From Phallusia mammillata (lineage: Eukaryota), in NCBI GenBank assembly GCA_965637545.1, contig OZ281500.1:2356001-2420000 (forward strand): a DNA stretch of 64,000 nucleotides, given 5' to 3'. The notes beneath the pieces are model-generated. The model was not told where the DNA came from. It worked only from the letters and a program-made list of their open reading frames with translations, and did no database searches. A program made the position numbers and the translations under genes. Shown piece by piece: positions 8,071 to 43,468 of the stretch; the first letter of the stretch is position 1, and the number at the start of each line of letters is the position of its first letter.

Positions 8071-10872
8071 TCAAAGTGTGTCTGCATGGTAAAATATGGA
8101 GGGGGAGCATTCGTAGAGTGGGATTGGTGACGTGATTTTTAACTCCCATTCACACAGGGTCAACATTTTGATAAGCAAAACAAACTTGTCTTCTACACAG
8201 CAATTCTCATACACAAACTGACAAAGTTTTATTCCATGTTTTGCGGCAGCAAGGCACTCCTCGTGGCGTCGTAGCCTTAATAAGTTTGAAACCAGAGAGA
8301 AAGCAGAAAGTACGGACATATCAAGATTTTTCAGACTTAAATATATCGACAATTGGAACGACATTTTGTAAAACCTAATTGCATCGTGTCGTCGACCGTC
8401 CTCAACCAGCTTTGCAGAAACATTCTGATGAACTACATAATGTTTTGCAAAGTCTTGTAAAGATAGCTTGGTTGTATTTTCTTTACGAAGTAGTTCCATC
8501 TTTTCATGCCAAAGTTTTTTTATTAACATTTCTGATTCTGTTAAGTGACCCACTTTTAGTAGGAAGTCAGCTTTATCCGCAAAGAAATGCTCAACTTTTC
8601 CAGAGGTCTTGCATTTTAATGCTTCGTCACAGTAAACAAGAGCTTCTTCGTATCTCTTTAAGTGGTACAGACTTTCAATTTTATGAAAAAACGCTGCGTT
8701 TAGAAATGTGTCGGTTTCCTCGGGTATACGCTCTTTTCGTATTTGGGATATTAATTCTTCATTTATCGAAAGAGCTTTGTTATAACAACCCGCACAATTT
8801 AGGCTGAAAAGAAACGGAACTAACAGTGCGCAATAACCGTAATTTGTTAAATTTATGGTAGGATCTTTTTTGGTCTCATTGTATGCGAGCTCGAAATAAT
8901 GCCGAGCCTTTTCGTAATCTTCGTGCATCATGTAGCAACCCCCAATCGTTCCGTAGGCATTCACCCTTAATTCACCTGCAATTCCATTTGAATGAACATC
9001 AGGTAACATTTCTATATATTTTAATGCTTGTCTGTGCTTTTTCAACATAGTTGCACTCCAAGCGCCCTGCATCAAGCATATAATTCGCTTACCGATTAAA
9101 CTTGGCGTATCAAGACGTGTTATTTCGTCGTCACAGATTTTGAGGACTTCTTCATATTCCCCAATTTGAGCCAAACATCCCACGCGCATTGTCTGCAAGA
9201 AACGTCGATCATCCTCATCAGTGGGTTTCCATTCATCTAATAACTTTAGAAGAAATGTGGATTCGTGCAATAAGTATGCCAGCCATACTTTACGAGATTG
9301 CGACTCCTCCAAATCAATGGGTATCTTACTTCTTGCATTTTCAAAGCAATCAATAACGTAGTCTTGGAGCGATGTTATTATATCTATTCCAACTATAACT
9401 GCTTTGTTGCCTATATTTTTCGTAAAGTATTCAGTACCCGATCGAGATGAAGAATATGGGCGATGTACAATGTCATTTTGTCCTGAAGTCCTGCTGTACC
9501 ACCTCAAACGCATTTCACATGCTATTGCCAACGAAAACTGAAGTTTGCACTGTAACATTTTATCGATAACACCACGATCTGCTAGTTCGTCAATGATTTC
9601 AAAACAGGTGAAATTGTAACATTTGTGCAAACGACCCAAAGCCAACACGAAAAGTGAAGAACTCCTTAACACAACACGCTTTATGTCTACTTTTCCATAT
9701 AAATCAAAGGTCTTTGGTTGGTAAAGGTCGAAATATTCTTTGATATTTTGCTGTGCCCGTTGATTGAAGATGGGCATCTGACTTAGTTTTTGCTGGGTTT
9801 TTGATTTAAACTGTTCAGAAACAACAACATCTCCAAATACGAAACAAGTTGTAGTCAACATATCTGCTAAATGATATCCGTTTTTCAAATCCTCTTCTGT
9901 TTCCAAGTACTTCACCATCTCACTGACTGGTTTGATCAGCTCAGTTGTCCACGGCTTCTTCTGTGTCTTTGTTTGTCTTCCCAATGGATTCTTACTTGCT
10001 TGAGGAGCAAAGCCATCAGGACAAATTCCACATGGAGTGTATGTGTCATAAAACCAATCTTCTTTTTCACTCAAGGGATTGTTAAGACATGGAATAGCCA
10101 AGAATTTAAGTATAGTTTCCCCCAGACGAACCAGTATCAATTGGAAAACAGTTGCAAACCATCGAAAGTAATCTAAAACAACATTGTAATTCTCTTGGTT
10201 TTTAATTTCTTCTTCCAATACAATGATGCTCTCAAAATCAGAATATGGAGTAACTTCTTTCTTGGCCAACGAACCCATTCCTACCAGAGCAAACTTGCAA
10301 GGTGGCTGTCCCATTATATAAACAGTGCGTCTTCCAATAAGACCCATTGTTTGCTTGTATGTTTCAGTAACATAATCCTGTATTTTCCTTACTTGCTTAA
10401 CTCTCTGCCTCTGTATTGCATTTAGTTCTTCGCCTTTCAAATCATCAGATATTGGTTTCAGCTCACTAAGTCTTATTTTTGTATTTTCACGAAATGTTTG
10501 AATTTGTTTTTTGGTTTCGGCAACAGCTTTATTTATCAGCTCTGCATCTGGATTTGCAGCGTTTGCCAACTTCATAATATGCGTGCACACGTCATCAAGA
10601 TCTCTTTTAATGTCATCTGCATTGTCAGGCTGCCTTAACACAGCTGATGTCATTAGAGCAACACTTTGAATGAGACTGATCTTATCTGGACCTTTTTCTT
10701 TGTACGCAAGTCCCAACTGATGCAAAGTTTTTGCTGATTCTTTTGGATCTTTTTCCACGCCATTGGGATAACATTGTTTCTTCAACTTAGTTGCTAAATC
10801 GTTGATTACTACGCCTGTTATTATGTCGTTCAAGCAATCGGATAAATTTTCGCATGCGGACATTTTTAGCAT
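8071..10872 (-). CDS. NTase-TPR protein, copy 2 (933 aa)
   Basis: Intact ORF with GSLAKKEVTPYSDFE, long active-site loop (GRQTKTQKKPWTTELIKP), TPRs and PSIFYHA. Acceptor TTTATTTGCAG|G ends at 10890. Confidence 0.92.
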   Translation of the reverse strand: MLKMSACENLSDCLNDIITGVVINDLATKLKKQCYPNGVEKDPKESAKTLHQLGLAYKEKGPDKISLIQSVALMTSAVLRQPDNADDIKRDLDDVCTHIMKLANAANPDAELINKAVAETKKQIQTFRENTKIRLSELKPISDDLKGEELNAIQRQRVKQVRKIQDYVTETYKQTMGLIGRRTVYIMGQPPCKFALVGMGSLAKKEVTPYSDFESIIVLEEEIKNQENYNVVLDYFRWFATVFQLILVRLGETILKFLAIPCLNNPLSEKEDWFYDTYTPCGICPDGFAPQASKNPLGRQTKTQKKPWTTELIKPVSEMVKYLETEEDLKNGYHLADMLTTTCFVFGDVVVSEQFKSKTQQKLSQMPIFNQRAQQNIKEYFDLYQPKTFDLYGKVDIKRVVLRSSSLFVLALGRLHKCYNFTCFEIIDELADRGVIDKMLQCKLQFSLAIACEMRLRWYSRTSGQNDIVHRPYSSSRSGTEYFTKNIGNKAVIVGIDIITSLQDYVIDCFENARSKIPIDLEESQSRKVWLAYLLHESTFLLKLLDEWKPTDEDDRRFLQTMRVGCLAQIGEYEEVLKICDDEITRLDTPSLIGKRIICLMQGAWSATMLKKHRQALKYIEMLPDVHSNGIAGELRVNAYGTIGGCYMMHEDYEKARHYFELAYNETKKDPTINLTNYGYCALLVPFLFSLNCAGCYNKALSINEELISQIRKERIPEETDTFLNAAFFHKIESLYHLKRYEEALVYCDEALKCKTSGKVEHFFADKADFLLKVGHLTESEMLIKKLWHEKMELLRKENTTKLSLQDFAKHYVVHQNVSAKLVEDGRRHDAIRFYKMSFQLSIYLSLKNLDMSVLSAFSLVSNLLRLRRHEECLAAAKHGIKLCQFVYENCCVEDKFVLLIKMLTLCEWELKITSPIPLYECSPSIFYHADTL

Positions 10873-13800
10873 TTATCGTTAATACTGACCTGCAAATAAA
10901 TCATTAGCACATGTGAACCCTTTTACATTAAACAATTCGTTCGTCTTTCTACCCTTTTTTCATGCGAAGTTTTCTGCAGTTTTCTTGATTGTAACATGTT
11001 ATCTTTCGAAATTTGACGTAGGATCTGTTTTTCAAAGAATGTATCATTTGATGATAGCATGAAACTCAAGCTCTCTTGTACTGGTAGTGTTTATAAACTT
11101 CAGTCAACCACCTCTTTCTCATCAGCTCTCCGGCTAAAACTTCGCGTGTAGTTAGGTCAACAAAGACAGTTTCATTCGATACGCCTCTACATCGCTTCAA
11201 GCTTGTAACAATAGTTTACAAAAGACGACGCTTTTGTTCTCCTATAAACCACGCCACCTGATATTGACGCGTTGTGTAGGAGAAATTATTGCAGTGTAGC
11301 CATCCGTTCCCATACGACGCCATTCTGACACAGAAAGGGTTTTGCTAAAAACTTCTTTGTTAAAAAATAACGAAGCTTGTCAAAGTACCCCATCATTAAA
11401 CATATATCTACAGAAGTCTAGGTCATAGCACAAACTATTTCATTAAAAAATAGGGGTAAACACCTTTTTATACAAAGACAGTAATGCCAAAGTTGGATTT
11501 TTGAAGCGCATTTGGCCTTGTCTTCTTCTTATAAACAAACATGCATTGGTAACCGTCACATGGGTGTTTTGGTAAGTTATATTGTATTTCGACCACACTA
11601 AATACCTTTTTTTGTATTTTGCAAATGTTAGTTTCAAGCTACTTTAACACATCCTATTTTGGAGTTATATTTCGTAGTTGTATACATTGATACTTGCTAT
11701 ATAAAAGGTGGTTGACGTATTAAATTATATCTGTCGGTTCTGTTATTTTTTCAGTGCTATCCGTTCCCACGTCCGTTGGCTGACTGCAAGTTATACACAT
11801 TGTGCATTTCAAAATTCACTTTAAAATCTTTCATCGAAGTTACTATGTGGCAAAAATGTAAAACCCGTTTTCGAAAATCGCAAAAAGCTTTATAAGTACA
11901 AACAAAAATAACTAAGTATTGCCTTGTTTTGATTTTGCTGGTTGGGTGGACTTTCGTCTGTTACAGACAAAGCAGCATGGCAACATGGGATTTACGATTT
12001 ATTCTTGGGTATTGTAGTTTGAAACAAGTCGAATACCTGGCGCAGACCAACGCTGACACCGGAGATGGATAAATACATTCCAAAGTTCGAAGTCGCTCCC
12101 GCTACGAAATATAAACACACAGTTTACCATTGTAAGGTGTTAGAAATCTTTTAGTGGTTTTTAGGAACTAAAAATTGCGAGTTTTTTCGCTCTTGAGTAA
12201 CTGAGCACACCAAATGAGGCCAACCTTTTTACACATAACACCTGTTCTAATTTTACAAAACGTTGTAACTTTTACATGTTTAAACTTTAAACCCATTATT
12301 TTAGATTTTTAATCACCTGAGTGTTAGACTGCACGATCATGTGCACGGTAACGACGAGGGATTTAAAACGTATCAGATACCGTACAGTATGCTGGTACAT
12401 TATTTGTGGCGAGGGCGCATCTGGCAGAACAACCAGGATGGAAATTAACTTTCACATCGTATTGACACATATCATGTTTAAATTGATTAAAATTTTTCTA
12501 AAGATACGTCGGCCTAAAGTAACATTCAGTCTAAATACCATGGCGTATCAATAGCACAGAGCAAATTAAATTTGACACAACAGATCACTTTTCCAGGTCG
12601 CGTGGCTCTATTGTGACAAAACGTTTGGTCCAACCCACGATTTCTTTCAAAACATTTTTAGTATCCTGTAAAACGTACAGCAACGAGCAGAGCTTTTCGA
12701 TTTTTCACCTACCCCATTACACAAAAGATTGTGGCTTTTGTCCCTTTTAACCTGTTAAACAAAGCTACGGTGACGAAACAAAGAACAAAACGTCACAACA
12801 CTAAATGAGCATGCTGTGAAATGTATTTAACAAAAACCTGGTGAAACGATCTCCAACCCGTAACAATGACAAACATGTTCCGACTCGCGAGGGTATTCTG
12901 AAACTACTTGGTTTGCAATGACAGTCGGATGTTACACTTATAACAATGTACCTTATTTTTGTAATATGATAACACTATAATTCGAACAAAAATAACGTTA
13001 CAAACATTTTTTTCTATTGTTGTTCATGTAAGGACAAAAACATTTTCTCTGTCGTTAAATGTATCAACGGGAAATTCATTTCTTTCATATTTGTTAGAGG
13101 GCGCTGCAACTTTGTACGCAAAATGCATAATAGCGGTTTTCTTAAAAATGATTTTTTTAACTGGTGCAAAAACTGTTGTAACTGCCCCAAACAAATTTGT
13201 ACACCTGTATATGATGCCGGTATTAATTCCAGTTTTGCAAAATTATTAACACTTACCTTTTTTCCCTGGCTAGCAAATTACTTTTGACCCTTTTTTTGAA
13301 ATACTACAGCAATTGGCCTGGATAATGATAAAGTCCACACAACACAAATGCATGTGTATAATGTTCTTGGGTGTAGGTTTTTGACTACAACATTGTGACC
13401 AAAAATAGTTTGATCAAGCTAAATTTCAGTTAACGGGGCTTGTGCTTCTAGAACAGTGATAATTTACGATGTTTGTGATCTATTGCGTCATCTAGTGGCA
13501 ACATATTTTAGCTCTGTTTAAAACAAAGATGTGACCAGAACTTTGTAACTTTGTACGCAGCTTTAGGTGCAATCTTTGTGATTTATATGTGCTCAGCTTA
13601 ACATAAACCTTTTCTATTTTTGCTAAAACTTCTGAATATCGATATATTTTGGTACAATTAAAACTTTGTCTATACGTGGCTTAATATATCACCAATTTGC
13701 AAATGCCTATGAACTTGTGCAATAAGTATTTGCATATAACCTCATTATCACTTTTAAATAGTTGACTCGCAGGAAATAGGTTATTACCACCTTTGCTGTT

Positions 13801-14900
13801 TTTGTATTTGTATTATGTACAGAGGTCATAAAAATAGACTTAGTTTCCATTTGTTTATTCTTTCCTTCATGAACGTAACCTTCTGTTCTATCAGGATTAT
13901 CACGTTTAAACTGTTTTTAGTTCAGAAGATGTTTTGTACAATCCTAAGAGGGACGACGGAATATAGATGAAAATGCGAATGACACAAGCTTAGAAAACAA
14001 ACAGGTGATGTCACTGTAATACCGTTGGTTGATGCTTTAACCGTCGTTAAAGATATATATTTAACATTATTTGAAGTATTATAGTATAAGTTCTTGTACA
14101 AGTCTTTCTTCGTTGTTTAGTATATGTGTTTTTCGCATTAACACAGCTTGAAAGCGTTGAAGTTACAACCACAAGAAGAACATATTTAGCAAAACTGCCT
14201 TCCAAATACACTTTACTACTCCACATTTCTTTTGTAAATTTGTCGCTAGGTGGAGTTAAAGATAATTACAGAACAAAACTGGCTGAATATGAGTATACAG
14301 TACCATCGTGATTTAAAGTCGTACTTCAGCGTCTGTCATGCATGTTTTCATTTGCGTCTCTTAGCTCTGTGCTTTGGGACCTAACGCAGCGGCAACGACA
14401 GGAGCGTATATTGTATTAGTATTTTTAACTCGGGCCAAATCAGTAAACCTAAGCAGTCTTGCAGAGTTTGCGATAATATTACATTTTGTTTGGTTTACTG
14501 AAATATTTACTTTTGGTTTGTTTGTACACAGAAGCTGCCTACTCGTGAACTAACGAAGATTCGAACTTTCCTTGAGCTGCAGAAATCTCGAACAAACTGT
14601 GAGTAAATCTGCTTTTGTAATTAATGCTTTAGAAACAGACAATCCGTGTTTTTGCTAGATGCTGAGGCCAATGAACTTTCTATTGACTTTTTATGTATTA
14701 TTTTAATTCTTTATGATTTACGTAGTTGTCTTATCCTTTTACCTTCTGTAAATTTTCGCATGAATATCGTAACCTGCGCTATAACATTTATCAACACTAT
14801 AAGGGAGTACAACGGTTTTCTGGCAACACTTGAAATCCTTACGCATTTTGTGAGAAGAAAACATGTTTTAATGTACTTTCTACAAGCCACAGTACATTAA
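10700..14900. repeat. Segmental duplication: intergenic region between copies 2 and 3 is colinear with that between copies 7 and 8 (~42260-47150)
   Basis: Near identity at 10700-11290 vs 42260-42845, then looser colinear similarity (e.g. 13760-14000 vs 45300-45560; 14150-14700 vs 45860-46390). Partial copies of the same upstream modules lie at ~27780-29930 and ~34800-35900. Confidence 0.88.
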
Positions 14901-15260
14901 CTATTATATCCAACATTTTTAAGTCAGCACAAATTGGGACCCTCAAAGCACAAGCGAAGTGCAAAACGCAGAAAAATGCGAATCATTAAAATATGTACTG
15001 AAACACATAGGACGATGTGATTACTTATTTGCAACAAACTTTTTTTAAATGCCTATGTTGCTCTTGTCTGCGAAAACGAAAACATTAAGGTAACTTTTAA
15101 ACTTTTTTAGTATAAATGACTGAAGACATGTTATTTGGTTATCAATTTTTTAAAGTTACAAATAAAATTTAAAAAAAGATGAGCAATTGGCAAAAGAAGC
15201 AAAAGCAAAAGAACAAAGGCAGATAAAAATTAGAAAAATTCTTGTCGAAACAATTTCGTT

Positions 15261-18027
15261 TTAGCAGCTCCGAAATGTTCCCGCATGGTAAAATATGGAG
15301 GGAGTGCAAACGCAGGGGAGATTTGTTGGTCTGATTCCTAATTCCTCCTCGCAGCGTGAAAATATGTGAACGAGTTTAACAGAGTTTCCCTCCATCCAGT
15401 AGTTCTTACATGCAAATTGCCAAAGTTTTAATCCATGTTTTGCGGCGGCAAGACACTCCTCGAAGCGTCGTAAAACGAGTAAAATTGTGACAAGTAACTG
15501 TGAAGCTTTTAGAAAAATTTTGATCGATTTAAGGCTCCCTAAATGAAATGATTTTTTGGCAAACCAAATTGCATCATTTGGTCGTTTATCTTCAAAATGC
15601 GATTCAGCAATGGCTTGATATACTAAACAGCAGAAGTCTGAATATTCTATCGTAGGTAGCTCCGCTTGAAACTCCATACGAATATGTTCTATCCTTTCTT
15701 GCCAAAAATCTTTCATGAAACTTTCTGCTTCTGCTAACCTCCCCAATTTTATCAAGCATTCAACTTTAGGAGAAACTACAAACATTGCATTGGCACTTGT
15801 GAAGGTATTTATTATAATGTTCCTTGATTTGTCAAGATACACAAGAGCTTCTTCGTATTTCTTCAATCCACGCAGACAGACGCCTTTGGAAAAAAATGCC
15901 CCATTTATATCAGGATCGGTGTCTTCATTTACATGCCGTTTTCGAATTTCGGATATCCATTCTTCATGTACCGAAAGGGCTTTTTCATAACAACATGATA
16001 AATTGAGGCACAAGCTATACTCTTGCAAAAGTTGTTTATAAGACTTATCGCTGCAGGTATGAGATAGTTCTTTCGATTGATTGTATGCTCGCTCTAAATA
16101 TTTTCGCGCATTTGTGTTGTCTTCAAGCTTCACATAGCATCTTCCCATGTGTGCATTGATCTCTATTTGTGATACAGACTGTATTCCTCGGGAAGAGTCC
16201 ACTAACATCAGTTTTGCATATTCCAATGCTTCTTTAAACCTGTTTAAACGAAATAGGCATCTGTGGGATAGGTGCAAGTACAAACCTCTCATGTCAACTG
16301 CAGGCGAAGTGAGTCGGGTCAGTTCGGTTTCACAAACTTCGAGACTTTTTTTATTTTCACCGCATTCGTGCAAAGACTTCGCATTAATATACTGTAGTTG
16401 ATCACGGACATGCTCAATCCTGCACTCTGCCGAGTCTTTACATTCCTTTATTAGTTTTAAAGCGAGACTATGCATATCAAATTGATATGCCAGCACAACA
16501 GTTCTAAACTGCGAGTCTAAAATAAACTTTTTTTTTCGTTTTTTCAATAAAGGATGATACGACATACTGTTGAAGTGGTTCAATGATAATAATTAATCCA
16601 TCTACAACTGCTCTGCTTCCTATGTCTTTGGAAACCTTTTCCATACTCGTTGGCCGACCGATTAATAATTCTGGAATTATAATGTCGCTTTGGCTTGAAG
16701 TCTTGCTGTACCATCTTAAACGGATTTCACATGCAACTGCCAAAGAAAATTGAAGTTTATCATGTAACACCTTGTCTATAATTTCGCGATCACTTAGTTC
16801 TTTAAGGATATTAAAACAGTTTATTTTCTTACAATCGTACAAACGACCAAGAGCCAAAACGAAAAGCGTACAACTCCTTAACGCAACACGTTTTATATCC
16901 ACTTTATGATCTGCTTTCAGGCCTACTACTTTGTATAGATCATAATCTTTTTTAATATTTTGCTGCACTCGTTGGTTAAAGATGGGGATCTGGTTTATTT
17001 TTTCTTCATTTTTTGAGTCAAACTCTTTGTAAACAGAAAAATCGCCGAACACAAAACAAGTTGTGGTCAACATATCTGCTAAATGATATCCGTTTTTCAA
17101 ATCCTCTTCTGTTTCTAAAATCTCCACCATTTTACTGACTGGTTTAATCAGCTCGATTGTTGTGTTTCCCAAGGGATTTTTGCTAGCTTGAGAAGCAAAT
17201 CCATCAGGACAAATACCACATGGGGTATATGCGTCATAAAACCAGTCTTCTTTTTTGTTTAAGGGATTGTTAAGACATGGAACAGCCAAGAATCGTAGTA
17301 ATGTTTCACCCAAACGAACCAGTATCATTTGGAAAACAGTTGCAAACCACCGAAAGTAATCTAAAACAATATTGTAATTCTCTTGGTTTTGAATTCCTTG
17401 CTCCAACACAATGATGCTCTCAAAGTCAGAATATGGAGTAATTTCTTTTTTGGCCAGTGAACCCATTCCTACCAAAGCAAATTCGCACAGTGGTTTCCCC
17501 ATAATGTGAACAGTATGTGTGGCAATAAAATTCATTACATTTCTAAACGTTTCAGTGACATAATTCTGTATTTCCCGTACTTGTTCAACTCTTTGCTTTC
17601 GCACGTTATTAAGTTCTTTACCTTTCAAGTCATCAGACATTCGTTTCAGCTTACTAAGTTTGTCTTTTGTGTTTTCACGAAGTGTTTGAATTTGTGCTTT
17701 GGTTTCGGCAACAACTTTACTCACCAGCTCTGCATCTGGATTTGCAGCGTCAGCCAACTTCATAATATGCATGCACACGTCATCAAGATCTTTCTTAATA
17801 TCATCTACATTGTCGGGCTGCCTCAACACAGCTGATGTCATTAAAGCAACACTTTGAATGAGACTGATCTTATCTGGACTTTTTTCTTTGTACACAAGTC
17901 CCAACTGATGCAAAGTTTTTGCTGATTCTTTTGGATTAATTTCCTCTCCATTGTCATAACATTGTTCATGTCTTAACTTATTTGCTAATTCAGTTTCTCT
18001 ACTCATGTCAACTCTCGCCATAAACAT
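15261..18027 (-). pseudogene. NTase-TPR copy 3, split by one frameshift at the enzyme/TPR junction (507-aa enzyme ORF plus TPR ORF)
   Basis: ORFs 16504-18027 and 15261-16583 overlap in different frames. Relative to copy 7 there are 19 nt instead of 21 between the homologous Thr and Asp/Glu codons (2-nt loss near 16518-16522), giving TAG at 16504-16506. Both halves are otherwise open. Acceptor TTTTCTTTGTTTTAG|G ends at 18066. Confidence 0.85.
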
Positions 18028-19245
18028 TCGCGCAAAGTTTTAAGCACCTATTTGGTTTAACAATCCTAAAACAAAGAAAATCGTATTTAAATTTTTATTT
18101 GTGGCACTGTTTGTTTATCTTCATTTTTCGTGGTATTCCGCTCTTAACTATACTTTCTCTCACTAATAACACTTGTGATATTACGAATGGGAAAACGAAA
18201 CTGAGTAGGTATATATAAATACTTCGGTCAACTACTCTTTCTCGTCAACTATCCTAAACAAAACCTCCAGTACGGTTTGAACAACAAAGGCAGTCCTCAC
18301 CTACGACGCGTCTACATCCCGTTTCTCATGACTCGAAACAATCACTTACAAGCGTACAAAAGCTGACTGCTGTTATTCTTGAATCTTACTCATCTGATGT
18401 TGACGATTTTTGTGGGAGATTTTGCCAACATGCATGGCAGAGTTGTTTTTACTTTTGGGTTAGATGGCAACTTCTGTGTTTTTTCTTCAAATAGTCAATT
18501 TATTGCTGTGAGGCCGACGACCCCTCTACCGCAACATACAAGTCCCTTAAAGATGGTAACATCTGCAAATTTCGCAGTGCAATAGCAAAGCGATATTTCT
18601 AATTCTCGCTCAAAACTTTTTTTAACAAAAACGTGATCGATTTAGTTAAATACCATCGCGTGCTAAAAAAATACAAAAAAAATGTGCCTTCTGAATTTTG
18701 TGGCTTGAATTTGCCAGACACAACTTTTGTTAAATCAGCAAATTTGTTATAAACAGCCTAAATACCAAGTATACCATGCGAACATCGTACAGGATTGAGT
18801 GATGGGTTGATTAACTGTGCCTGAATGTGTTGTGGGTGGAAACAACACTACAATGACCCAGCAAAGGTTTACGCGCTATAATACAGAATTAGGATACTGT
18901 TACAGGTATTTAGTTAGCGCTTCGGGGAACTGTGACCAACCTCTACCTATGTGCCTGTAACTTTATACAATTCGCCTTTGTTTCGGTAGAAATAAAAAGA
19001 CCCATACAGTTGGGCTAAATAACGTTAGAGTCGCGCCAAAGTATAATTCAGATAACACAAACCAGTTGACTTTTCTGTCATAATACCTCTTTGTTACCTT
19101 TTTGTTAAAGTTTTGATTAAATCGGTTCTATCACCCTTGATATATTACGTAAAATTTGTAAGGAATTTAAGACGAAGCTAAATAGTGCCCGTTGTAACAA
19201 GTCATTGAAAGCAAGTATTTAACTTGTCATCAATGGTGTCTATAG

Positions 19246-19625
19246 TAACTTGTTGCATTTGTACAATCGACCTAGAATCAAAACGAAAAGAGAACAACTT
19301 CGTGAAACAACACGCTTTATGTCTACTTTTCCAAACAAATTGCTGGGCTTTATTTTGAAGAGATCGAAATCTTTTTCAAGATTCTGTTGTGCTCGTTGGT
19401 TGAAGATGGGCATCTGATTTAGTTTTTTTTTATCAAGATCTTTACTATGTCATCTGCATTGCTGGGCTGCCTTAACACAGCTGATGTCATTAAAGCAACA
19501 CTTTGAATGAGACTGATCTTATCTGGACTTTTCTCTTTGTACTCAAGTCCCAACTGATGCAAAGTTTTTTCTGATTCTTTTGGATCTTTTTCCACACCAT
19601 TAGGATAACATTGTTTCCTTAACAC
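19246..19625 (-). pseudogene. NTase-TPR copy 4: fragment with the catalytic core deleted
   Basis: 19432-19622 encodes the N-terminal KQCYPNGVEKDPKESEKTLHQLG...RQPSNADDI segment. It is joined at ~19431 directly to LNQMPIFNQRAQQNLEKDFDLFKIKPSNLFGKVDIKRVVSRSCSLFV, which closely matches copy 9. Homology ends at ~19246 and no TPR region remains. Confidence 0.9.
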
Positions 19626-20585: not shown

Positions 20586-20644
20586 CTGCCTCCCAATCAC
20601 AACGTTTTTTAAAAACTGCCTCCCAATCACAACGTTTTTCAAAA
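20586..20644. repeat. Two-copy 30-bp tandem duplication
   Basis: CTGCCTCCCAATCACAACGTTTTT(T/C)AAAA repeated twice. Confidence 0.85.
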
Positions 20645-23169: not shown

Positions 23170-23345
23170 AAGTGGTGGGATTTAGCCGGTTCGCACCGGT
23201 TCTATAAAACTGTCTCACGAATGTTTATGAGATCAGCGAACCGGTTAGCATAACTGGTTACTGTCAATGGATTTTGTAATAGAACCGGCTAAAATATGAC
23301 TTTTGTGATAGAACCGGCTGACAAAAAATTTGAATCTCACCACTG
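23170..23345. mobile_element. hAT-type MITE (176 bp)
   Basis: Imperfect TIRs AAGTGGTGGGATTT / GAATCTCACCACTG, repeated internal GAACCGG motifs, degenerate 8-bp flanks TATCAGAC / CATTAAAC. Absent from the paralogous site at ~6740-6750 (empty site). Confidence 0.8.
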
Positions 23346-31822: not shown

Positions 31823-34750
31823 TTATAGTGGTTTGATTTGCAACTTTCGGTTGTGTAGCGCTTTTTTGAGCATCTTGTGTGCCGCGCATTTTGCAAAAAC
31901 GTAACTACGTAATGGAAAATTGTAAATTGAACTTGAATCGGTCAACCGCTTGTGCAAAATTGATCCTGCATGGTAAAATATGGAGGGGGTGGATTCGTAG
32001 GATGGAGTTGGTGGCCTGACTTTTAACTTCCATTCACACTTCGCCAACGTTTTGACAATTTCAACAAATATTTCTTCCACACAGCAGTTCTCATAAGCAA
32101 ACTGACAAAGTTTTATTCCATGTTTTGCGGCAACAAGGCACTCCTCGTAACGTCGAAGCTTGAATATGTGTGTAACCACAGAGCATGTAGCAGTTACGTT
32201 CATTTCAAGATCTTCGAAATATTGATTCATATTTTCCAAATAAATCGGCAACTGAAACGCCATTTTGTCAAATATATCTGCATAGCCATGTACGACGTCC
32301 TTAACCAGGTCTTCAGTAATTACTGCGAGTTCGGGAAAATCTGTCACAGTTTGCTTGGTTGGAACCATTATTTTGAAGCAAATTTCTGTAAATGCCATCT
32401 TTGCTTCCGCTAACCGATCCAATTTTTTTAAGGAATTCATTTTAAACTCGAACAAACAGTCTAATGTTCCCAAATCCATGCATTTTAATGCTTCATCACA
32501 GTAAACAAGAGTTTCCTCGTACCTCTTTAGTGCGTACAAACTCACATATCTATTATGAAATGCTGAATTTAGTACTGTGTCGGTTTCCTCATCTACATGC
32601 TCTTTTCGTCGTTCGGATATTAATTCGTCATTCACCGAAATAGCTTCGTCATAACAACCCCCAAAATTAAGGCATACATTAAAACCATTTAAGAGTACGA
32701 AATAAATCCAATTGAACTTTATGTCAAAGTCGTTTTTAAATTCATTGTATGCGAGCTCTAAATAATGCCGAGCTTTTGCGTAGTTTTCATTCACCATGTA
32801 GTAATTCCCAATCGCTATGTTGATTTCTGTTCTTAGTTCACCCGAAATTTCATTTGAATCAACGTCAGATAACATTTTTATATATTTCGATTCTTGTTGG
32901 TACTTTTTTAACATATTTAAAGATCCGCAATATATCAGCAAGACACGAACACGCATGACGAATAATCTTGGTGCACTAAGTCTTGGTAACTCGTTCTCAC
33001 AAATTTTAACGATTTCTTCATACTTCCCAGTTTGAAACAAACATACTGCTCGCATAACCTGCAATACATGTTGGCCTTGCTCATCCAATTCATCATCAGA
33101 GGTTTTACATTCATCTAATAGTTCTAAAGCAAGTGTGAATAGTTGCCATAGTAATGCCTGCCACGCTGCAAGAAATGGCGACTCCACAATATCAATGGTT
33201 TCCTCAATTCTTTCATTTTCAAAGCAATCAAGAACGTAGTGTTGGAGGGATGTTATGATATTTATTCCAACTATAACTGCTCTGTCACCTATGTCTTTTG
33301 TAAGGTGATTAGTGCCCGATTGATGTAAAGAGAATGGGCGATGTACAATGTCGTTTTGACCTGATGTCCTGCTGTACCACCTCAAACGCTTTTCACATGC
33401 CACTGCCAACGAAAATTGTAGTTTGCTATGCAATGTATCGTCCACAATATCGCGACCCAAAAGTTCGTCAAGGATTTCAAAACAGGTAAAATTTTTACAT
33501 TTGTATAAACGTCCAAGAGCCAAAACAAAAAGAGAACAACTCCGGAACACAACTCGCTTTATGTCTACTTTCCCTAATAAATCCAAGGAGTTTAGTTGGT
33601 AAAGATCGAAATCTTTTTTAATATTTTGCCGTGCCCGTTGGTTGAAAATGGACATTACATTCAGTTTTTGCTTGATTTTTGATTTGAACTCCTCATAAAC
33701 ACCAGAATCGCCAGCAACGGAACATGTTTCGGTCAACATGTCGGCTAAATGATATCCATTTTTTAGATCCTCTTCTGTTTCCAAGTACTTTACCATCTCA
33801 TTGACGGGTTTAATAAGCTCGGTTGTCCACGGCTTCTACTTTGTCTTTGTTTGTCTTCCCAATGGGTTCTTACTTGCTTGGGGAGCAAATCCATCAGGAG
33901 AAATTCCACAAGTAGTGTGTGCGTCATAAAACCAATTTTCTTCCTTCTTTAAGGGATTGTTGAGACATGGAATGGCCAGGAATGTGAGTAAAGTTTCACC
34001 GAGCCGAACCAGTATCATTTGGAAAACAGTTGCAAACCAACGAAAATATTCCAAAATGTTTTTGTAATCAGGCCGTTCCTTACATTTTCCCTCCAACACA
34101 ATAATGCTCTCGAAGTCAGAATATGGAGTAATTTCTTTTTTGGCCAACGAACCCATTCCTAACAAGGCAAACTTACAAGGTGATTCCCCAATTATCTGCT
34201 CGGTATGTTCAGCAATAAGCTCCATAATCTTAGTGTATGCTTTACTTACGAAATTTTGAATTTCTCTCATGTTTTCAACTCTTTTCCTCTGATTTGCATC
34301 AAGCTGTTCGCCTTTTAAGTCGTCAGACATTGGTTTGAGCTCACTAAGTTTATCTTTTGTGTTTTCACGAAGTATTTGAATTTTTGCTTTTGTCTCGACA
34401 ACAGCTTTACTCACCAAATCTGCATCTAGGTTTGCAGCGTTAGCCAACGTCATAATATGCATGCACACGTCATTAAGGTCTTGTTTAATTGCTTCAACAT
34501 TGTCTGGCTGCCTTAACACAGCGGATGTCATTAAAGCAACACTTTGAATGAGACTGATCTTATCTGGACTTTTCTCTTTGTACACAAGTCCCAACTGATG
34601 CAAAGTTTTTGCTGATTCCTTTGGTTCAATTTCCACTCCATTGTTATAACATTGTTTTCTCAACTTAGTTGCCAAATCGCTGATGACTACTTCTGTTATT
34701 ATATCGTTTAAACAATCGTACGAATCTTTGCATGCATACATTTTTGGCAT
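31823..34750 (-). pseudogene. NTase-TPR copy 6 with one in-frame nonsense codon
   Basis: ORFs 33836-34750 and 31823-33796 are in the same frame. TAG at 33836-33838 replaces the AAG (Lys) of TKTQKKPW seen in other copies, and the 13 intervening codons (KPWTTELIKPVNE) are intact. Acceptor TTTAATACAG|G ends at 34768. Confidence 0.88.
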
Positions 34751-35944: not shown

Positions 35945-35992
35945 AAAAAGCTTTGACATAATTCTTATAAAAGCTTTGTCATAATTCTTATA
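35945..35992. repeat. Two-copy 23-bp tandem duplication
   Basis: AAAAGCTTTG(A/T)CATAATTCTTAT repeated twice. Confidence 0.8.
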
Positions 35993-38015: not shown

Positions 38016-39606
38016 ATCTAAGCTGTCCTTGATAGAACATGGTTGTGTAAAAAAAGCTTTGCGAAAAAATATTTGATTAACTTTCCTCTGAACTGTTGCG
38101 GGCTAGGATTATGCATACTACCGTATATGTATATAAGTATAGATTTTGATTGAAACGCAATACGTACAACATATGTGCGCGGTACGCTGATTACAGTACA
38201 ATGCTTTATGATTTGAGGTTATTACGCCCTGGATAAAGCAAAACTCCTTTTGACCGGGGTCGCATTCCGCCAACAGACAAATTTAATGATATTCGTGATA
38301 TTCTGCGTCATCTAGTTGCAAAAGCAATCGTCTCTTGCTTCAGAATTAACTTTCTGTGAACGCTTTGCAGGCTTGCATGCATCACCAATTCTGAAAGTGG
38401 TGGCAACTTCGACGGGTACACCAAACAGATGCTAAAAGAACAGGAGACAAACCAATTTGTATTGTGAGTAATTACTGAACCACCTGGTGGTGGAATAGAT
38501 TGTTAGGTAATTTTTGTACCTTCGTAAGTATAGTTTTAAAAACAAACTTTACTTAACTATTGGTTTTAACATAGACTCGCGTAAAACAAGTTGATTTGTT
38601 CCGCCCTGCACCACAGCTTGACGAACCCAACGTTTCGTAAGTTTTGCATAAAGAAACGCCTTCGTAATAACAATTATTAACTCGTACCGTACAGAATAGA
38701 GGTTTCATTTTCTTTGTATCCGTGTTTTTATTTTACCACATGCAAAGTTCAAATAAAAAAAACTTCGCATTGCATGTTTATTTTTTTAGTTTTTTACTTC
38801 TTAATCAACCTAAACCTTTTGTATGAAATCCAGGATTACGACCTGAAGTTGGTGTTTACAAAGACACTTTAGACTACCCTACAAAAGGTAAAAGAGCCAC
38901 TATAACAGGATGCAACAGAAGAAGACAAATCCGTCGAAACACAGGTGCTTTTGGCTTATAAACGGTTTGATGCTTCGTTGAGTATTATTGTAGATACAGT
39001 CATTAGTAAGTTCGATCTCATACAATACCCTTTGGCCTGTTCTTGTCTCTCATGTACCGCTTTTGCATGCTTAATGTTACTTTGTGAACTTCAAATTAAC
39101 ATTACGCTTTTTTAACTAAGTGGTTTTAGTGATTTAAGTTTTGTAATCCTCTTTTAGGGGTGTAAAATTATTGATGTAAATTGTCTTCGCTATAACGAGT
39201 TATATAAAACTTCTGTGGCTTTTTTCCGTATCCTACGCTGGAACTTTATGCAAACGTATAAGGGGTGCGATTGTTTCCCCGGCAACACCTATAATCCTCA
39301 CGATTTTTAATGAGAAAACGTTTTTTTTAATACAATTTACAAGCAATAGCACATCAACAAATATGTCTAACATTCGTAAATGGGCACAGCTGCAACCGTT
39401 GAAGCACAAGCGAAGTACAAAATCCATCAAAAAGCAAAACATGCACAAAAACACATAAATATAACCTAATTGTTTTTTCTTGAATAATGAATTTTAAATG
39501 CCTGTTGCGTAAAGTTTTCAAAACAATCTTGTGTGCGACAAAACAAAAACATTAAACTAACTATTAAACGCTTGCTTTAAGTTATTTTAGTACCATATTT
39601 TTCTTC

Positions 39607-42426
39607 TTACAACTCAAGGAAATGTCGCAACCAACATGTTCCCGCGTGGTAAAATATCGAGGGAGTGCAATCGTAGGGGAGTTTTGTTGGGCTGCTTCCT
39701 AATTCCAATTCGCTGCGTGAAAATTTGTGGACGAGATCAACAAACGTTTCCTCCACCCAGTAGTTCCCACATGCAAATTGCCAAAGTTTTATTCCATATT
39801 TTGCGGCGGCAAGACACTCCTCGAAGCGTCGTAAATCGAATAAAATTGCGGCAAGTAAGTGGGAAGCTTTCAGAAAACATTTGATCGATTTAAGGCTCCC
39901 GAAATGAAATGATTTTTTGGCAAACCAAATTGCATCGTTGGGTCGTTTATCTTCAAACTGCTGTTCAGAAATGCACTGGTATGTTAAGCAGCAGAAGTCT
40001 GAATATTCTATCATCGATAGCTCCGCTTCAAACTCCATACGAATATGTTCCATCCTTTCTTGCCAAATATCTTTCAAGAAACTTTCTGCTTCCGCTAACC
40101 GGCCCAATTTTATCAAGCATTCAACTTTAGGATAAACTAACGACATTGTATCAGTACTTTTGAAGTTATTCATTACAACGTTTCTTGATTTGTCAAGATA
40201 CACAAGAGCTTCTTCGTACTTCTTCAAACCATGCAGACTGATGCCTTTAGAATAAAATGCCCAATTCATATCAGGATCGGTGTCTTCATTTACGTGCAGT
40301 TTTCGTATCTCGGATATCCATTCGTCATGTACCGAAAGGGCTTTGTCATAACACCCCGAAAAATTTAGGCAAAGGCTATAGCTATATAAAATATTTTTAT
40401 ATATGTACTCGCCGTAGTTATGAAATTGTTTTTCTTTCGTTTCGTTTAATGCAAGCTCTAAATATTTTCGCGCATTTTTCTTGTGGTTGAGGTGCAGATA
40501 GCATCTTCCCATGTATACATTGATCTCTATTTGTGAGACAGACTTCATTCCACGGTTAGAGTCCACTAATAGCATTTTTGTATATTCCAATGCTTCTTTG
40601 AACCTATTTAAATGGCACAGGCATTGGTAGCATAGTTCCAAGTACCAACATCGTATGTTGACTAAAGTAGTAAGGGTTAATCGGGTCAGTTCGTCTTTAC
40701 AGACTTTGAGACTGTTTTCATGATCGCCGCACTGATGCAAAGACTTTGCATACATAAGCTGCAGTTTAACACGGACATGCTCATTTTTGCACTCTTCCGA
40801 CTCTTCACATTCCTTTATAAGTTTTAAAGCGAGATCAAACATAAGAAGTTTCCATGCCAACACAGCAGCTCTAAACGGCGATTCTGAAAACTGAATTTTT
40901 TGTTTTGTTTTTTCAATAAAGGATGTTACGACATATTGTTGCAGTGATTCATTGATAACTAATCCATCCACAACTGCTCTGTTTCCGATGTCTTTTGATA
41001 CCTTTTCCATACTCGATGGCCGACCAAATACTGTTTCTTGATTTATAATATCGCTTTGACTTGAAGTCTTGCTGTACCACCTTAACCGGATTTCACATGC
41101 AACTGTCAACGAAAATTGAAGTTTATTACGCAACATCTGGTCTATAATACCACGATCACTCAGTTCGTCAAGGATATCAAAACACCTCAAATTCTTACAA
41201 TCGTACAAACGACCAAGAGCTAAAATGAAAAGAGTACAACTCCTTAACGCAACACGCTTTACATCCATCTTTAGACGTATGTCCAGGCTTCCCACGTTGT
41301 AAAGTTCATAATCTTTTTTAATATTTTGCTGCACTCGTTCGTTAAAGATAGGCATCTGGTTTATTTTTTTTTCAATTTTTGAGTCAAACTGTTTATAAAC
41401 AGAAAAATCGCCATACACAAAACAAGTTGTGGTCAACATATCTGCTAAATGATATCCGTTTTTCAAATCTGTTTTTGTTTCCAAGAACTTCACCATCTCA
41501 CTGACGGGTTTAATCAACTCAAGTGTTGTATTTCCCAGTGGATTCTTGCTTGCTTGAGGCGCAAAACCATCAGGACAAATTCCACATGGAGTAAATGCGT
41601 CATAAAACCAATCTTCTTCTTTATTCAAAGGATTATTAAGACACGGAATCGCCAAGAACCTAAGCAAGGTTTCACCGAGACGAACCAATATCATTTGATG
41701 AACTGTTGCAAACCATCGAAAGTGATTTAAAACCATATTGTAATTCCAACAATTGTGAATTTCATTTTCCAATACAATAATGCTTTCAAAATCGGAATAA
41801 GGAGTAATTTCTTTTTTAGCCAACGAACCCATTCCTACCAAAGCAAACCTACATGGTTCTTTCCCCATTATGTTGGCAGTGTGTTTTCCGATGAGAGCCA
41901 ATATGTCTTTGTATGTTTCAGTGACGTAATCCTGTATTTTTCTCACTTGTTCAACTCTTAGCCTCCGTATTGCAATAAGCTCTTGGTCTTTTAAGTCGTC
42001 AGACATTGCCTTCAGTTCACACAGTTTATCTTTTGTGTTTTCACGAAATTTTGTAATTTCTTCTTTGGTTTCTGTAACTGCTTTACTCACCAGTTTGGCA
42101 TCTGAATTTGCAGCGTTGGCCAACGTCATGATATGCAAGCACACGTCATCAAGGTCTTTCCAAATGTCATCTGCATTGTCGGGTTGCCTTAACACAGCTG
42201 ATGTCATTAAAGCAACACTTTGAATGAGACTGATGTTATCTGGACTTTTCTCTTTGTACGCTAGTCCCAACTGATGCAAAGTTTTTGCTGATTCTTTTGG
42301 ATCTTTTTCCACGCCATTGGGATAACATTGTTTCTTCAACTTAGTTGCTAAATCGTTGATTACTACGCCTGTTATTATGTCGTTCAAGCAATCGGATAAA
42401 TCTTCGCATGCGGACATTTTTAGCAT
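39607..42426 (-). CDS. NTase-TPR protein, copy 7 (939 aa; short-loop type)
   Basis: Intact ORF with GSLAKKEITPYSDFE, short loop ASKNPLGNTTLELIKP, TPRs most like copy 3, and PSIFYHA. Acceptor ends at 42444. Confidence 0.92.
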   Translation of the reverse strand: MLKMSACEDLSDCLNDIITGVVINDLATKLKKQCYPNGVEKDPKESAKTLHQLGLAYKEKSPDNISLIQSVALMTSAVLRQPDNADDIWKDLDDVCLHIMTLANAANSDAKLVSKAVTETKEEITKFRENTKDKLCELKAMSDDLKDQELIAIRRLRVEQVRKIQDYVTETYKDILALIGKHTANIMGKEPCRFALVGMGSLAKKEITPYSDFESIIVLENEIHNCWNYNMVLNHFRWFATVHQMILVRLGETLLRFLAIPCLNNPLNKEEDWFYDAFTPCGICPDGFAPQASKNPLGNTTLELIKPVSEMVKFLETKTDLKNGYHLADMLTTTCFVYGDFSVYKQFDSKIEKKINQMPIFNERVQQNIKKDYELYNVGSLDIRLKMDVKRVALRSCTLFILALGRLYDCKNLRCFDILDELSDRGIIDQMLRNKLQFSLTVACEIRLRWYSKTSSQSDIINQETVFGRPSSMEKVSKDIGNRAVVDGLVINESLQQYVVTSFIEKTKQKIQFSESPFRAAVLAWKLLMFDLALKLIKECEESEECKNEHVRVKLQLMYAKSLHQCGDHENSLKVCKDELTRLTLTTLVNIRCWYLELCYQCLCHLNRFKEALEYTKMLLVDSNRGMKSVSQIEINVYMGRCYLHLNHKKNARKYLELALNETKEKQFHNYGEYIYKNILYSYSLCLNFSGCYDKALSVHDEWISEIRKLHVNEDTDPDMNWAFYSKGISLHGLKKYEEALVYLDKSRNVVMNNFKSTDTMSLVYPKVECLIKLGRLAEAESFLKDIWQERMEHIRMEFEAELSMIEYSDFCCLTYQCISEQQFEDKRPNDAIWFAKKSFHFGSLKSIKCFLKASHLLAAILFDLRRFEECLAAAKYGIKLWQFACGNYWVEETFVDLVHKFSRSELELGSSPTKLPYDCTPSIFYHAGTCWLRHFLEL

Positions 42427-43468
42427 TTATCGTTAATACTGACCTGCAAATAAATCATTAGCACATGTGAACCCTTTTACATTAAACAATTTGTTCGTCT
42501 TTCTGCCCTTTTTTCATGAGAAATTTTCTACAGTTTTTTTGATTGTAACATGTTATCTTTCGAAATTTGACGTAGGATCTGTTTTTCAAAGAATGTATCA
42601 TTTGATGATAGCATGAAACTCAAGCTCTCTTGTACTGGTAGTGTTTATAAACTTCAGTCAACCACCCCTTTCTCATCAGCTCTCCGGCTAAAACTTCGCG
42701 TGTAGTTAGGTCAACAAAGACAGTTTCACTCGATACGCCTCTACATCGCTTCAAGCTTGTAACAATAGTTTACAAAAGACGACGCTTTTGTTCTCCTATA
42801 AACCACGCCACCTGATATAGACGCGTTGTGTAGGAGAAATTATTGCAGCGTAGCCATCTGTGCCCATACAAAGCTATTCTGACACCGAAAGGGTTTTGCT
42901 AACTTCTTTGTTAATAAATAACGAAGCTGGTCAAAGTATCTCATCATCAAACATATATCCACAGAAGATTTGGTCGTGGCACAAAATATTTCATTAAAAA
43001 ATGGGAGTAAACACTTTTTTAATCCAAATACATTAATGCCAAAAGTTGGATGTTTCAAGTGCATTTGGCCTTGTCTTCGATCCAAACGTTTTTCCACATA
43101 GTATTGTATTGTTGTTTTTCAAAGCAAAAATCCAGAGGCGATCCTTCAATAGGTGTTTTATATTTCATATCTCGATCCACACTAAAAGCCTTTTTCACAA
43201 ATGTTTGTTTTAAGCTACTTTTAACATATCTTATTTCAGGGTTGCATACATTAATACTTGCGTGGTATATGAAAGGTGGTTGACATATTTATCAACATTC
43301 AGTTGGTTCTGTTTGTTTTTTCAGTACTATTCGTTCTCACGCCCGTTGACTGACTGCAAGTTATACACATCGTGCATTTTGCTATAAAATGTTTCATCGA
43401 TGTTATTTTGTGTCAGAAATATAAAACCTTTTTCCAAAAATGTAAAAGCATAGAGCCAATAAATTATA

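What the first reader, a model, noticed from the sequence alone, without database searches (positions are those of the whole stretch)
8071..42845. Paralogues are mosaics: 5' end, active-site loop, TPR type and 3' flank give conflicting groupings
Seen: 5' ends group as {2,7}, {5,6}, {8,9}. The short loop and TPR type group {3,7}, while TPR type groups {2,5,6,9}. 3' flanks group {2,5}, {6,9}, {3,8}. Copy 7 shares a nearly identical ~600-bp tract with copy 2 (42260-42845 vs 10700-11290, mostly non-coding), yet its enzyme and TPR parts resemble copy 3. Copy 6 carries the patch RQPDNVEAIKQDLNDVCM, otherwise found only in copy 1. Inference: unequal crossing-over and conversion shuffle promoters, enzyme variants and sensor repeats, which is a combinatorial diversification mechanism.
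Basis: partly seen in the sequence, partly recalled or inferred. Interest (0 to 1): 0.7.

Follow-up and report, generated by a model that had tools for sequence, protein, structure and literature searches.

The report
Recombinant mosaic genes in enzyme-TPR array
Neighbouring copies of an unstudied sea-squirt gene (a bacterial-style protein-tagging enzyme joined to a TPR binding arm) have swapped pieces, mainly their upstream regions and first third, which is the usual way tandem gene clusters evolve.

Summary
The window holds eight full-length copies and one relic of an intronless GlnE/DrrA-fold nucleotidyltransferase-TPR gene, part of a family of at least 52 copies in a tunicate-type genome.

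- **Tree-like part:** from about nt 1000 to the stop, that is the enzyme's C-lobe, the TPR arm and the proximal 3' flank. It defines stable lineages: {3,7} plus 8, {2,5,6,9}, and copy 1 outside.
- **Conflicting part:** the 5' flank and the first ~1000 nt have conflicting histories. AU tests reject each other's trees (p below 1e-4). PHI gave 0 of 1000 permutations.
- **Copies 3 and 7:** dS is 0.16-0.34 in the body but 1.14 at alignment columns 500-900.
- **Recent tracts:** three tracts of 96.7-98% identity over 0.4-1.6 kb (2/7, 9/L005, 3/L001) cover the 5' flank plus the first ~165-250 coding nt. All end in a nearly invariant ~100-nt island. A second hinge lies at about nt 830-1030.

The cause is ectopic recombination, meaning gene conversion and unequal crossing-over. 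This is well known from plant NLR and other arrays. The "combinatorial diversification mechanism" is only partly supported. Upstream and N-terminal modules are reassorted, but I saw no TPR type reassorted away from its enzyme C-lobe, and no adaptive role is shown. The scan already met this family elsewhere in this genome; the mosaic analysis is new.

The parts
1487..4612 (-). Copy 1: intact 1041-aa NTase-TPR gene of a different subfamily (nearest relative L010). It serves as the outgroup.
4388..4428 (-). Copy 1 side of the c1/c6 micro-tract (about 41 nt identical to c6 about 34472-34512). It encodes the patch NVEAIKQDLND.
8071..10872 (-). Copy 2: intact 933-aa gene. The body belongs to clade II. 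The 5' end is c7-like and the 3' flank is c5-like.
10709..11294 (-). Copy 2 side of the recent exchange tract with copy 7 (98.3% identity, 10 differences in 586 nt). It covers the 5' flank plus the first ~165 coding nt.
10633..10740 (-). Conserved island 1 (c2 nt 133-240), nearly invariant across the family. Mean synonymous difference is 0.09 against ~0.5 elsewhere. It is the common 3' end of the recent 5' tracts.
9842..10040 (-). Conserved island 2 (c2 nt ~833-1031), 95-96% identical among c2, c5, c8, L002-L004. It holds the loop that is 8 codons shorter in clade I and is a second recurrent hinge.
11884..14986 (.). The c3-c2 spacer, collinear at 72-87% with the c8-c7 spacer (43643-47107). This is evidence for an old block exchange or duplication that spanned the spacer.
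15261..18027 (-). Copy 3: pseudogene with a 2-nt deletion near 16523. The body is clade I (c7-like), the distal 3' flank is c8-like, and the 5' end is L001-like.
17801..18825 (-). Copy 3 side of the recent 5' tract shared with L001, the next part of the array about 54 kb away. Identity is 96.7% over the core 389 nt (17801-18189) and mostly 91-100% per 100 nt out to 18825.
19246..19623 (-). Copy 4: a 380-bp relic made of the island-1 region plus a piece from ~800 nt further 3', with an internal deletion between them.
24791..27607 (-). Copy 5: intact 938-aa gene of clade II, with a c2-like 3' flank.
31823..34750 (-). Copy 6: clade II body with an in-frame TAG at 33836-33838. The 3' end and flank are c9/L007-like, and it carries the c1-like micro-tract near 34472-34512.
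39607..42426 (-). Copy 7: intact 939-aa three-part mosaic. The stretch from 42900 to 42190 is c2-like, 42181 to 41385 is like neither, and 41383 to 39631 is c3-like (clade I, short loop).
42263..42848 (-). Copy 7 side of the recent tract shared with copy 2. Its upstream edge is seen in contigs of independent public runs.
43643..47107 (.). The c8-c7 spacer, collinear with the c3-c2 spacer.
47512..50355 (-). Copy 8: intact gene with a very divergent TPR arm (at most 66% to any copy examined). The 5' end is L006- and c9-like, and the 3' flank is c3-like.
58731..61661 (-). Copy 9: intact gene. Its body is nearest to L007, about 800 kb away (83-94%), and its 3' flank is c6-like.
61417..62976 (-). 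Copy 9 side of a 1.56-kb tract at 97.8% shared with L005 (about 48 kb away). The TPR arms of the two genes are only ~50% identical.

Best explanation
The window is part of a large tandem array of intronless genes. Each gene encodes a GlnE/DrrA-fold nucleotidyltransferase joined to a TPR arm. The paralogues are true recombinants.

**Shown:**
- From about nt 1000 to the stop, plus the proximal 3' flank, the copies follow one tree and fall into stable types.
- The 5' flank plus the first ~240 nt follows a different history, and nt ~240-1000 follows yet another.
- Three very recent exchange tracts link copies 30-55 kb apart.
- Breakpoints pile up at two highly conserved coding islands.

**Inferred:**
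- The exchanges are ectopic homologous recombination in the germ line. Short bounded tracts are gene conversions. Larger events, including unequal crossing-over, copied whole spacers.
- The islands act as hinges because they are the only stretches identical enough for strand invasion and resolution between copies that differ by 15-40% elsewhere.

The net effect is twofold. Upstream and N-terminal modules are placed in front of different enzyme/TPR bodies. The 5' third evolves in concert, while the TPR arms keep diverging (pairwise dN/dS about 0.5).
For: **Family and fold:**
- Pfam DUF294 scores above its cut-off, together with TPR hits.
- The model of c2 aa 1-520 has pLDDT 88, and its best PDB matches are DrrA and GlnE.
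- G200, S201, D212 and E214 are invariant.
- The genome holds at least 52 copies.

**Incongruence:**
- PHI on the whole CDS: 0 of 1000 permutations.
- The {3,7} and {3,7,8} splits rest on 80 and 56 sites, nearly all at column 900 or beyond.
- AU tests with 8 copies and with 21 copies give p below 1e-4 between 5' and body partitions. The two body partitions are nearly congruent with each other.
- c3-c7 dS is 1.14 at columns 500-900 against 0.34, 0.33 and 0.16 afterwards.
- The c7 triplet test gives chi-square 405, 0 of 300 permutations, with three zones.

**Recent tracts, including non-coding DNA:**
- c2/c7: 586 nt at 98.3%.
- c9/L005: 1561 nt at 97.8%, with TPR arms ~50% identical.
- c3/L001: 389 nt at 96.7%, with mostly 91-100% identity further upstream.
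- These flanks occur only upstream of family members, so they are not transposons.

**Hinges:**
- Mismatch density jumps at c2 nt ~243-254 in four pairs, and at ~1021 in c2/c8.
- Island 1 has mean synonymous difference 0.09.

**Other:**
- The c3-c2 and c8-c7 spacers are collinear.
- The flank of c3 switches from c8-like to clade-I-like near 14850.
- Contigs from three other studies carry the upstream edge of the c7 tract.
Against: - No read or contig bridges the downstream edge of the c2/c7 tract. It lies in the island shared by all copies, where short-read contigs break. That junction rests on the assembly alone.
- Conversion cannot be separated from reciprocal unequal crossing-over for most events, and no donor or direction is known.
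- The hinge role of the islands is an inference. Islands have few informative sites, so breakpoints can only be placed in or next to them. Their conservation could be a result of overlapping conversions rather than a cause.
- PHI within nt 330-900 of 21 copies shows no local signal. That region's conflicts could be partly homoplasy.
- There are no expression data and no population data.
Confidence: 0.85

Rival explanations
1. There was no recombination. The conflicting groupings come from uneven selective constraint and chance convergence along a single duplication history.
For: The 5' third is strongly conserved at protein level across tunicates (consensus). In nt 330-900 of 21 copies PHI finds no distance-dependent signal. 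Relations among c2, c5, c6 and c9 are poorly resolved everywhere.
Against: Constraint cannot make c3-c7 synonymous divergence drop from 1.14 to 0.16-0.34 along the gene. It also cannot make non-coding flanks 98% identical in just one pair while other pairs are 64-85%. AU tests reject a common tree.
Confidence: 0.03
2. The mosaics are assembly artefacts: reads from different paralogues were joined through the conserved islands.
For: The breakpoints sit exactly at the most repeated stretches. Contig depth rises about 40-fold at 42072-42405, and no short-read contig crosses that stretch.
Against: The islands are only 100-200 nt, far shorter than the reads behind a 25-Mb contig. An independent 1180-nt contig (X5) and tiling unitigs (X1, X2) carry the upstream edge of the c7 tract at 98-100%. 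The same kind of mosaic recurs in many copies, and older events have aged junctions.
Confidence: 0.05
3. The array is a selected module-shuffling system. Exchange is favoured because it creates new promoter-enzyme-sensor combinations for defence.
For: The architecture looks like an immune receptor: a conserved enzyme and a fast-diverging TPR arm with dN/dS ~0.5. Exchange of 5' modules at a fixed hinge is recurrent and recent. Pseudogenes take part (c3).
Against: TPR types stay linked to the enzyme C-lobe. Exchange mainly homogenises the 5' third. No immune role, expression pattern or selection for chimeras has been shown. The pattern is what any tandem array produces.
Confidence: 0.1
4. Most of the pattern comes from reciprocal unequal crossing-over and block duplication, with gene conversion playing little part.
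For: The c3-c2 and c8-c7 spacers are collinear over ~3 kb. Flank groupings look like duplication units. The family shows copy-number expansion and relics such as c4.
Against: The c2/c7 tract is a bounded island of 98% identity inside older 70-90% homology on both sides. The c1/c6 tract is only 41 nt. Both are hallmarks of conversion. The two processes probably act together.
Confidence: 0.25

Closest known systems
Plant NLR (R-gene) clusters evolving by birth-and-death with gene conversion, e.g. the coffee SH3 CNL cluster (PMC3113787)
   Same: Both are tandem arrays of sensor-type genes. Both show conversion between paralogues, duplications and deletions, and a faster-evolving repeat (ligand-binding) domain next to a conserved enzymatic or switch domain.
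   Different: The protein here is a GlnE/DrrA-fold nucleotidyltransferase with TPRs in an animal, not NB-ARC with LRRs. Exchange is concentrated in the 5' flank and first third. I did not test site-wise positive selection, and no immune role is known.
Concerted evolution of part of a gene by ectopic conversion with fixed boundaries (my own knowledge, not checked here: globin and RHD/RHCE-type paralogue pairs)
   Same: High-identity tracts are bounded by diverged sequence, synonymous sites are homogenised, and tract ends recur at the same places.
   Different: Here many copies tens of kb apart take part, and the tracts include the upstream region.
Antigen gene families that recombine at conserved homology blocks (my own knowledge, not checked here: Plasmodium var, trypanosome VSG)
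   Same: Conserved blocks flank variable modules, the genes are mosaics, and pseudogenes can take part.
   Different: Those systems show high-rate mitotic recombination or programmed expression-site switching. Nothing here indicates somatic or programmed exchange.
GlnE / GlnD / Legionella DrrA (SidM) protein nucleotidyltransferases
   Same: They share the fold (Foldseek E 7e-7 to 4e-6), the Pfam DUF294 hit and the G-S...D-x-E catalytic motif.
   Different: Sequence identity is only 10-14%. The protein is fused to a TPR arm, is encoded in an animal genome in at least 52 intronless copies, and has an unknown substrate.

Membership tests
DUF294 / GlnE-DrrA-type nucleotidyltransferase | Pfam PF03445 hit above the curated cut-off | tested here: met
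   26-31.5 bits against a cut-off of 21 in all six intact copies scanned
DUF294 / GlnE-DrrA-type nucleotidyltransferase | Pol-beta-type catalytic motif G-[GS]-x(9-13)-D-x-[DE] | tested here: met
   G200, S201, D212 and E214 are invariant in 30 sequences
DUF294 / GlnE-DrrA-type nucleotidyltransferase | Fold similarity to solved members | tested here: met
   Model pLDDT 88 and pTM 0.89. Top PDB matches are 6yx5_B (DrrA), 3k7d and 1v4a (GlnE) at probability 1.00, with TM only 0.41-0.59
DUF294 / GlnE-DrrA-type nucleotidyltransferase | Nucleotidyl transfer to a protein substrate | not testable with these tools
   Needs a biochemical assay
Tandem arrays shaped by ectopic gene conversion / unequal crossing-over | Different segments of the paralogues give significantly different trees | tested here: met
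   AU tests and PHI
Tandem arrays shaped by ectopic gene conversion / unequal crossing-over | Bounded tracts of near identity that include synonymous and non-coding sites, inside older diverged homology | tested here: met
   c2/c7, c9/L005 and c3/L001 tracts, and the dS shift in c3/c7
Tandem arrays shaped by ectopic gene conversion / unequal crossing-over | Junctions confirmed on single molecules, and new chimeras or copy-number variants among individuals | tested here: inconclusive
   Only short-read contigs were available. The upstream edge of the c7 tract is confirmed in three studies, but the downstream edge is not bridged
Programmed diversification systems (expression-site conversion, somatic shuffling) | Somatic or high-rate directed exchange from silent donors into an expressed site | not tested
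   No RNA or somatic DNA data were available, and nothing in the sequence points to it
Immune-receptor-like families under diversifying selection | Positive selection in the repeat (sensor) domain | tested here: inconclusive
   Pairwise dN/dS is 0.46-0.53 in the TPR part against 0.21-0.37 in the enzyme part. No site-wise test was run

The most novel reading that the evidence does not exclude
The two nearly invariant coding islands (about nt 133-240 and 830-1030) may be kept identical at the nucleotide level, synonymous sites included, because they serve as recombination hinges. The family would then have a built-in modular architecture: upstream/N-terminal module, catalytic N-lobe, and C-lobe with TPR arm. 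These modules would be reassorted across the array, as happens at the homology blocks of antigen gene families, but in the germ line of a chordate.
Probability: 0.12. Interest if true: 0.75.

Novelty: new member of a known kind. Interest (0 to 1): 0.4.

Why it matters
It shows how a very large, unstudied invertebrate-chordate gene family evolves. The family joins a bacterial-type protein nucleotidyltransferase to a TPR arm. The enzyme's front third and the upstream regions are exchanged and homogenised within the array, while the TPR arm and enzyme C-lobe persist as diverging types.

There are three practical consequences:
- Trees of this family must be built from the region after about nt 1000.
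- Orthology cannot be read from flanks or N-termini.
- Any expression difference between copies may follow the swapped upstream module rather than the body.

The recurrent hinge at an island with almost no synonymous change is a concrete, testable oddity.

Tried and rejected
- **Transposon origin of the tracts:** I checked whether the near-identical 5' tracts are young transposon insertions. They occur only upstream of family members, with graded identity, so I rejected this.
- **Megablast filter:** megablast at 93% identity or more missed the tracts because the alignments run on into diverged sequence. I replaced it with a sliding scan inside the blastn alignments.
- **Failed runs:** MAFFT G-INS-i on whole units timed out, and the first IQ-TREE run failed on its thread setting.
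- **PDB by sequence:** this found nothing. The search by fold did.
- **Literature:** two searches found no paper on this family.
- **Single-molecule check:** the available runs are short-read contigs that break in the conserved island.
- **tRNA scan:** nothing found.
- **History of the array:** I considered a simple two-gene block duplication, (c8,c7) to (c3,c2). It explains the spacers but not the bodies, so further exchanges are needed.
Full report
**What is there.**
- The window is C7:2356001-2420000 of a 240-Mb eukaryotic genome. It contains no N and no tRNA gene.
- On the minus strand lie eight full-length intronless open frames of 933-1041 codons, spaced about 7-11 kb apart, plus one 380-bp relic.
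- Six are intact. Copy 3 has a 2-nt deletion near 16523. Copy 6 has an in-frame TAG at 33836-33838.
- Each protein has a DUF294 nucleotidyltransferase hit above Pfam's cut-off, and TPR repeats.
- A model of residues 1-520 of copy 2 is confident (pLDDT 88). Its only significant PDB matches are Legionella DrrA and E. coli GlnE. The G-S...D-x-E motif is invariant in 30 homologues.
- Named homologues are from the tunicates Clavelina and Ciona.
- The genome has at least 52 copies, mostly on this contig.
- Other reports of this scan reached the same reading of the family on other windows. I found no paper on it.

- N-terminal peptides group {2,7}, {5,6}, {8,9}.
- The 8-codon short loop is shared by copies 3 and 7.
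- TPR indels and trees separate {2,5,6,9} from {3,7}, with 8 near the latter.
- 3' flanks group {2,5}, {6,9}, {3,8}.
- The c2/c7 tract has 10 differences in 586 nt at exactly the stated coordinates.
- The c1/c6 patch is unique among 21 copies examined.

Two corrections apply. Copy 7 is c3-like only from about nt 900-1000 onward. The {5,6} 5' grouping is weak.

**It is more than chance.**
- PHI on the whole coding alignment gives 0.364 against 0.405 +/- 0.0025 for permuted site orders, 0 of 1000.
- Sites supporting {3,7} (80) and {3,7,8} (56) lie almost entirely at alignment column 900 or later.
- Trees of columns 900-1700, 1700-2438 and 2746-3200 share the same main clades, and most of the AU comparisons among them do not reject. 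Trees of columns 110-500 and 500-900 are rejected by those data at p-AU 1e-4 or less. All the reverse comparisons but one also reject.
- I added 13 paralogues from elsewhere on the contig and from another contig. The four partitions still reject each other, except that the two body partitions are nearly congruent.
- The clearest single number is synonymous divergence between copies 3 and 7. It is 0.29, 0.58 and 1.14 in columns 110-300, 300-500 and 500-900, then 0.34, 0.33 and 0.16 in the last three regions. Selective constraint cannot produce that pattern.
- A triplet walk shows copy 7 in three zones (chi-square 405, 0 of 300 permutations):
  - 42900-42190 is c2-like, at 230 of 240 informative sites.
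  - 42181-41385 is like neither parent.
  - 41383-39631 is c3-like, at about 85% of sites.

**Recent tracts and a common hinge.** Scanning all pairs for windows of 96% identity or more and profiling the pairs gave three recent tracts:

| Pair | Tract | Identity | Rest of the pair |
|---|---|---|---|
| c2/c7 | 586 nt | 98.3% | 65-88% |
| c9/L005 | 1561 nt | 97.8% | TPR arms only ~50% identical |
| c3/L001 | 389 nt | 96.7%, then mostly 91-100% further upstream | 57-84% |

- Each tract covers the 5' flank and the first ~165-250 coding nucleotides. The partners lie 30-55 kb apart in the same array.
- These flanks are not transposons. They occur only upstream of family members, with graded identity.
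- In c2/c7, c9/L005, c3/L001 and c6/c8 the mismatch density jumps at c2 nt ~243-254. That is the 3' edge of an island (nt 133-240) that is nearly invariant across the family. In that island the mean synonymous difference is 0.09, against about 0.5 elsewhere.
- A second island (nt ~833-1031) holds the variable loop. It marks the start of the c3/c7 shared block, and c2/c8 divergence jumps there from about 12% to 30-45%.
- I infer that the islands are where exchange tracts start or end, because only there are diverged copies identical enough. The reverse, that overlapping conversions keep the islands identical, is not excluded.

**Older, larger events.**
- The c3-c2 spacer (11884-14986) is collinear with the c8-c7 spacer (43643-47107) at 72-87%.
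- The distal 3' flank of copy 3 is c8-like up to about 14850. Its proximal flank and body are clade I. So a clade-I body now sits in a c8-type setting.
- Bodies form lineages that cross arrays. Clade I, with the short loop, contains c3, c7, L008, L009 and L015. The nearest body to copy 9 is L007, about 800 kb away.
- The first 330 nt pair copies within this array: c2 with c7, c3 with L001, c9 with L005, all strongly supported, and c8 with L006 more weakly.
- Segment by segment, every window copy has a different nearest relative.

**Are the junctions real?**
- Only short-read contigs of public runs were available.
- An 1180-nt contig from one study spans 42283-43464 at 98%. Exact unitigs from another study tile 42668-43483, and a third study adds shorter contigs across the same stretch. 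So the upstream edge of the c7 tract exists in other samples.
- No contig crosses 42138-42296, the island, where depth rises about 40-fold because all paralogues share it. The downstream junction therefore rests on the assembly.
- Misassembly through a 100-200-nt repeat in a 25-Mb contig is unlikely, but it is not excluded here.
- Contigs assigned to copy 7 carry the c2 state at 42505, 42530, 42538 and 42667, four of the ten c2/c7 diagnostic positions. All four appear together on the X5 contig. This could reflect polymorphic or repeated conversion. It could also come from c2-derived contigs being laid on this stretch.

**Interpretation.**
- The cause is non-allelic homologous recombination, meaning gene conversion together with unequal crossing-over. 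This is the classical behaviour of tandem arrays. It is documented, for example, for plant NLR clusters (PMC3113787).
Upstream and N-terminal modules and the catalytic N-lobe are reassorted. The loop type, C-lobe, TPR arm and proximal 3' flank stay together.
- In the 5' third the exchange homogenises. Median dS is 0.25-0.42 there, against 0.7-1.0 further on.
- There is some recombination signal inside the TPR part with 21 copies (z = -4.3). It is weak with the 8 window copies.
- TPR arms evolve faster (dN/dS about 0.5 against 0.2-0.37), but I ran no site-wise selection test.
- No adaptive or immune role has been shown.

**Verdict.** This is a well-supported but ordinary evolutionary process in an unstudied family. 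Its one distinctive feature is the recurrent hinge at an island with almost no synonymous change.

Noticed in passing
window 43408-43741: Contig depth in all four public runs is about 1000-4000 times that of neighbouring DNA, for example 658,781 against ~150 in X1. Many contigs break or skip 33-81 nt here. It is a very abundant short repeat and coincides with the hammerhead-like pair noted by another first-stage finding (s1-349190).
   Followed up: no
window 10633-10740 and the same segment in every copy (e.g. 42148-42334, 61378-61581, 27298-27524): This coding island has a mean synonymous difference of 0.09 against about 0.5 elsewhere. It is 95-96% identical even to copies Mb away that are otherwise 67-78% identical. 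Protein constraint alone does not explain it.
   Followed up: partly
window 42505, 42530, 42538, 42667: At four of the ten positions that distinguish the c2 and c7 tracts, contigs from other samples that extend into c7-specific upstream DNA carry the c2 state. At 42530 and 42538 all four runs do. This may be polymorphic or repeated conversion, or c2-derived contigs laid on this stretch.
   Followed up: partly
window 38800-39606 and L009 (C7:3208000-3216000): The 3' flank of copy 7 is nearest (77% over 736 nt) to the 3' flank of a clade-I copy about 800 kb away, not to any copy in the window. This links the two arrays.
   Followed up: no
window 31832-31991 and L007 5322-5481: The 3' end of copy 6 is 96% identical over ~155 nt to a copy about 800 kb away, while the two genes are 74% identical overall. 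It looks like a short 3' exchange tract or a conserved tail.
   Followed up: no
L003 1-1006 and L004 1296-2302 (C7:2445500-2462000): A 1-kb stretch of 95.5-97% identity is shared by two neighbouring loci of the next part of the array. In L004 it lies 3' of the gene, and a TPR-like remnant sits inside it in both loci. It is another recent exchange or duplication.
   Followed up: no
window 12527-12939, 29119-29535, 35562-35876, 43850-44014: A ~400-bp element recurs at 69-79% in four spacers of the array. It is either part of the ancestral repeat unit or an old mobile element.
   Followed up: no
window 33836-33838 and 16523: The stop codon of copy 6 lies inside the very loop (RQTKTQKKPW) that is shortened in clade I. 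Copy 3 is broken by a 2-nt deletion, yet it has a very recent 5' tract shared with L001. So pseudogenes take part in exchange.
   Followed up: partly
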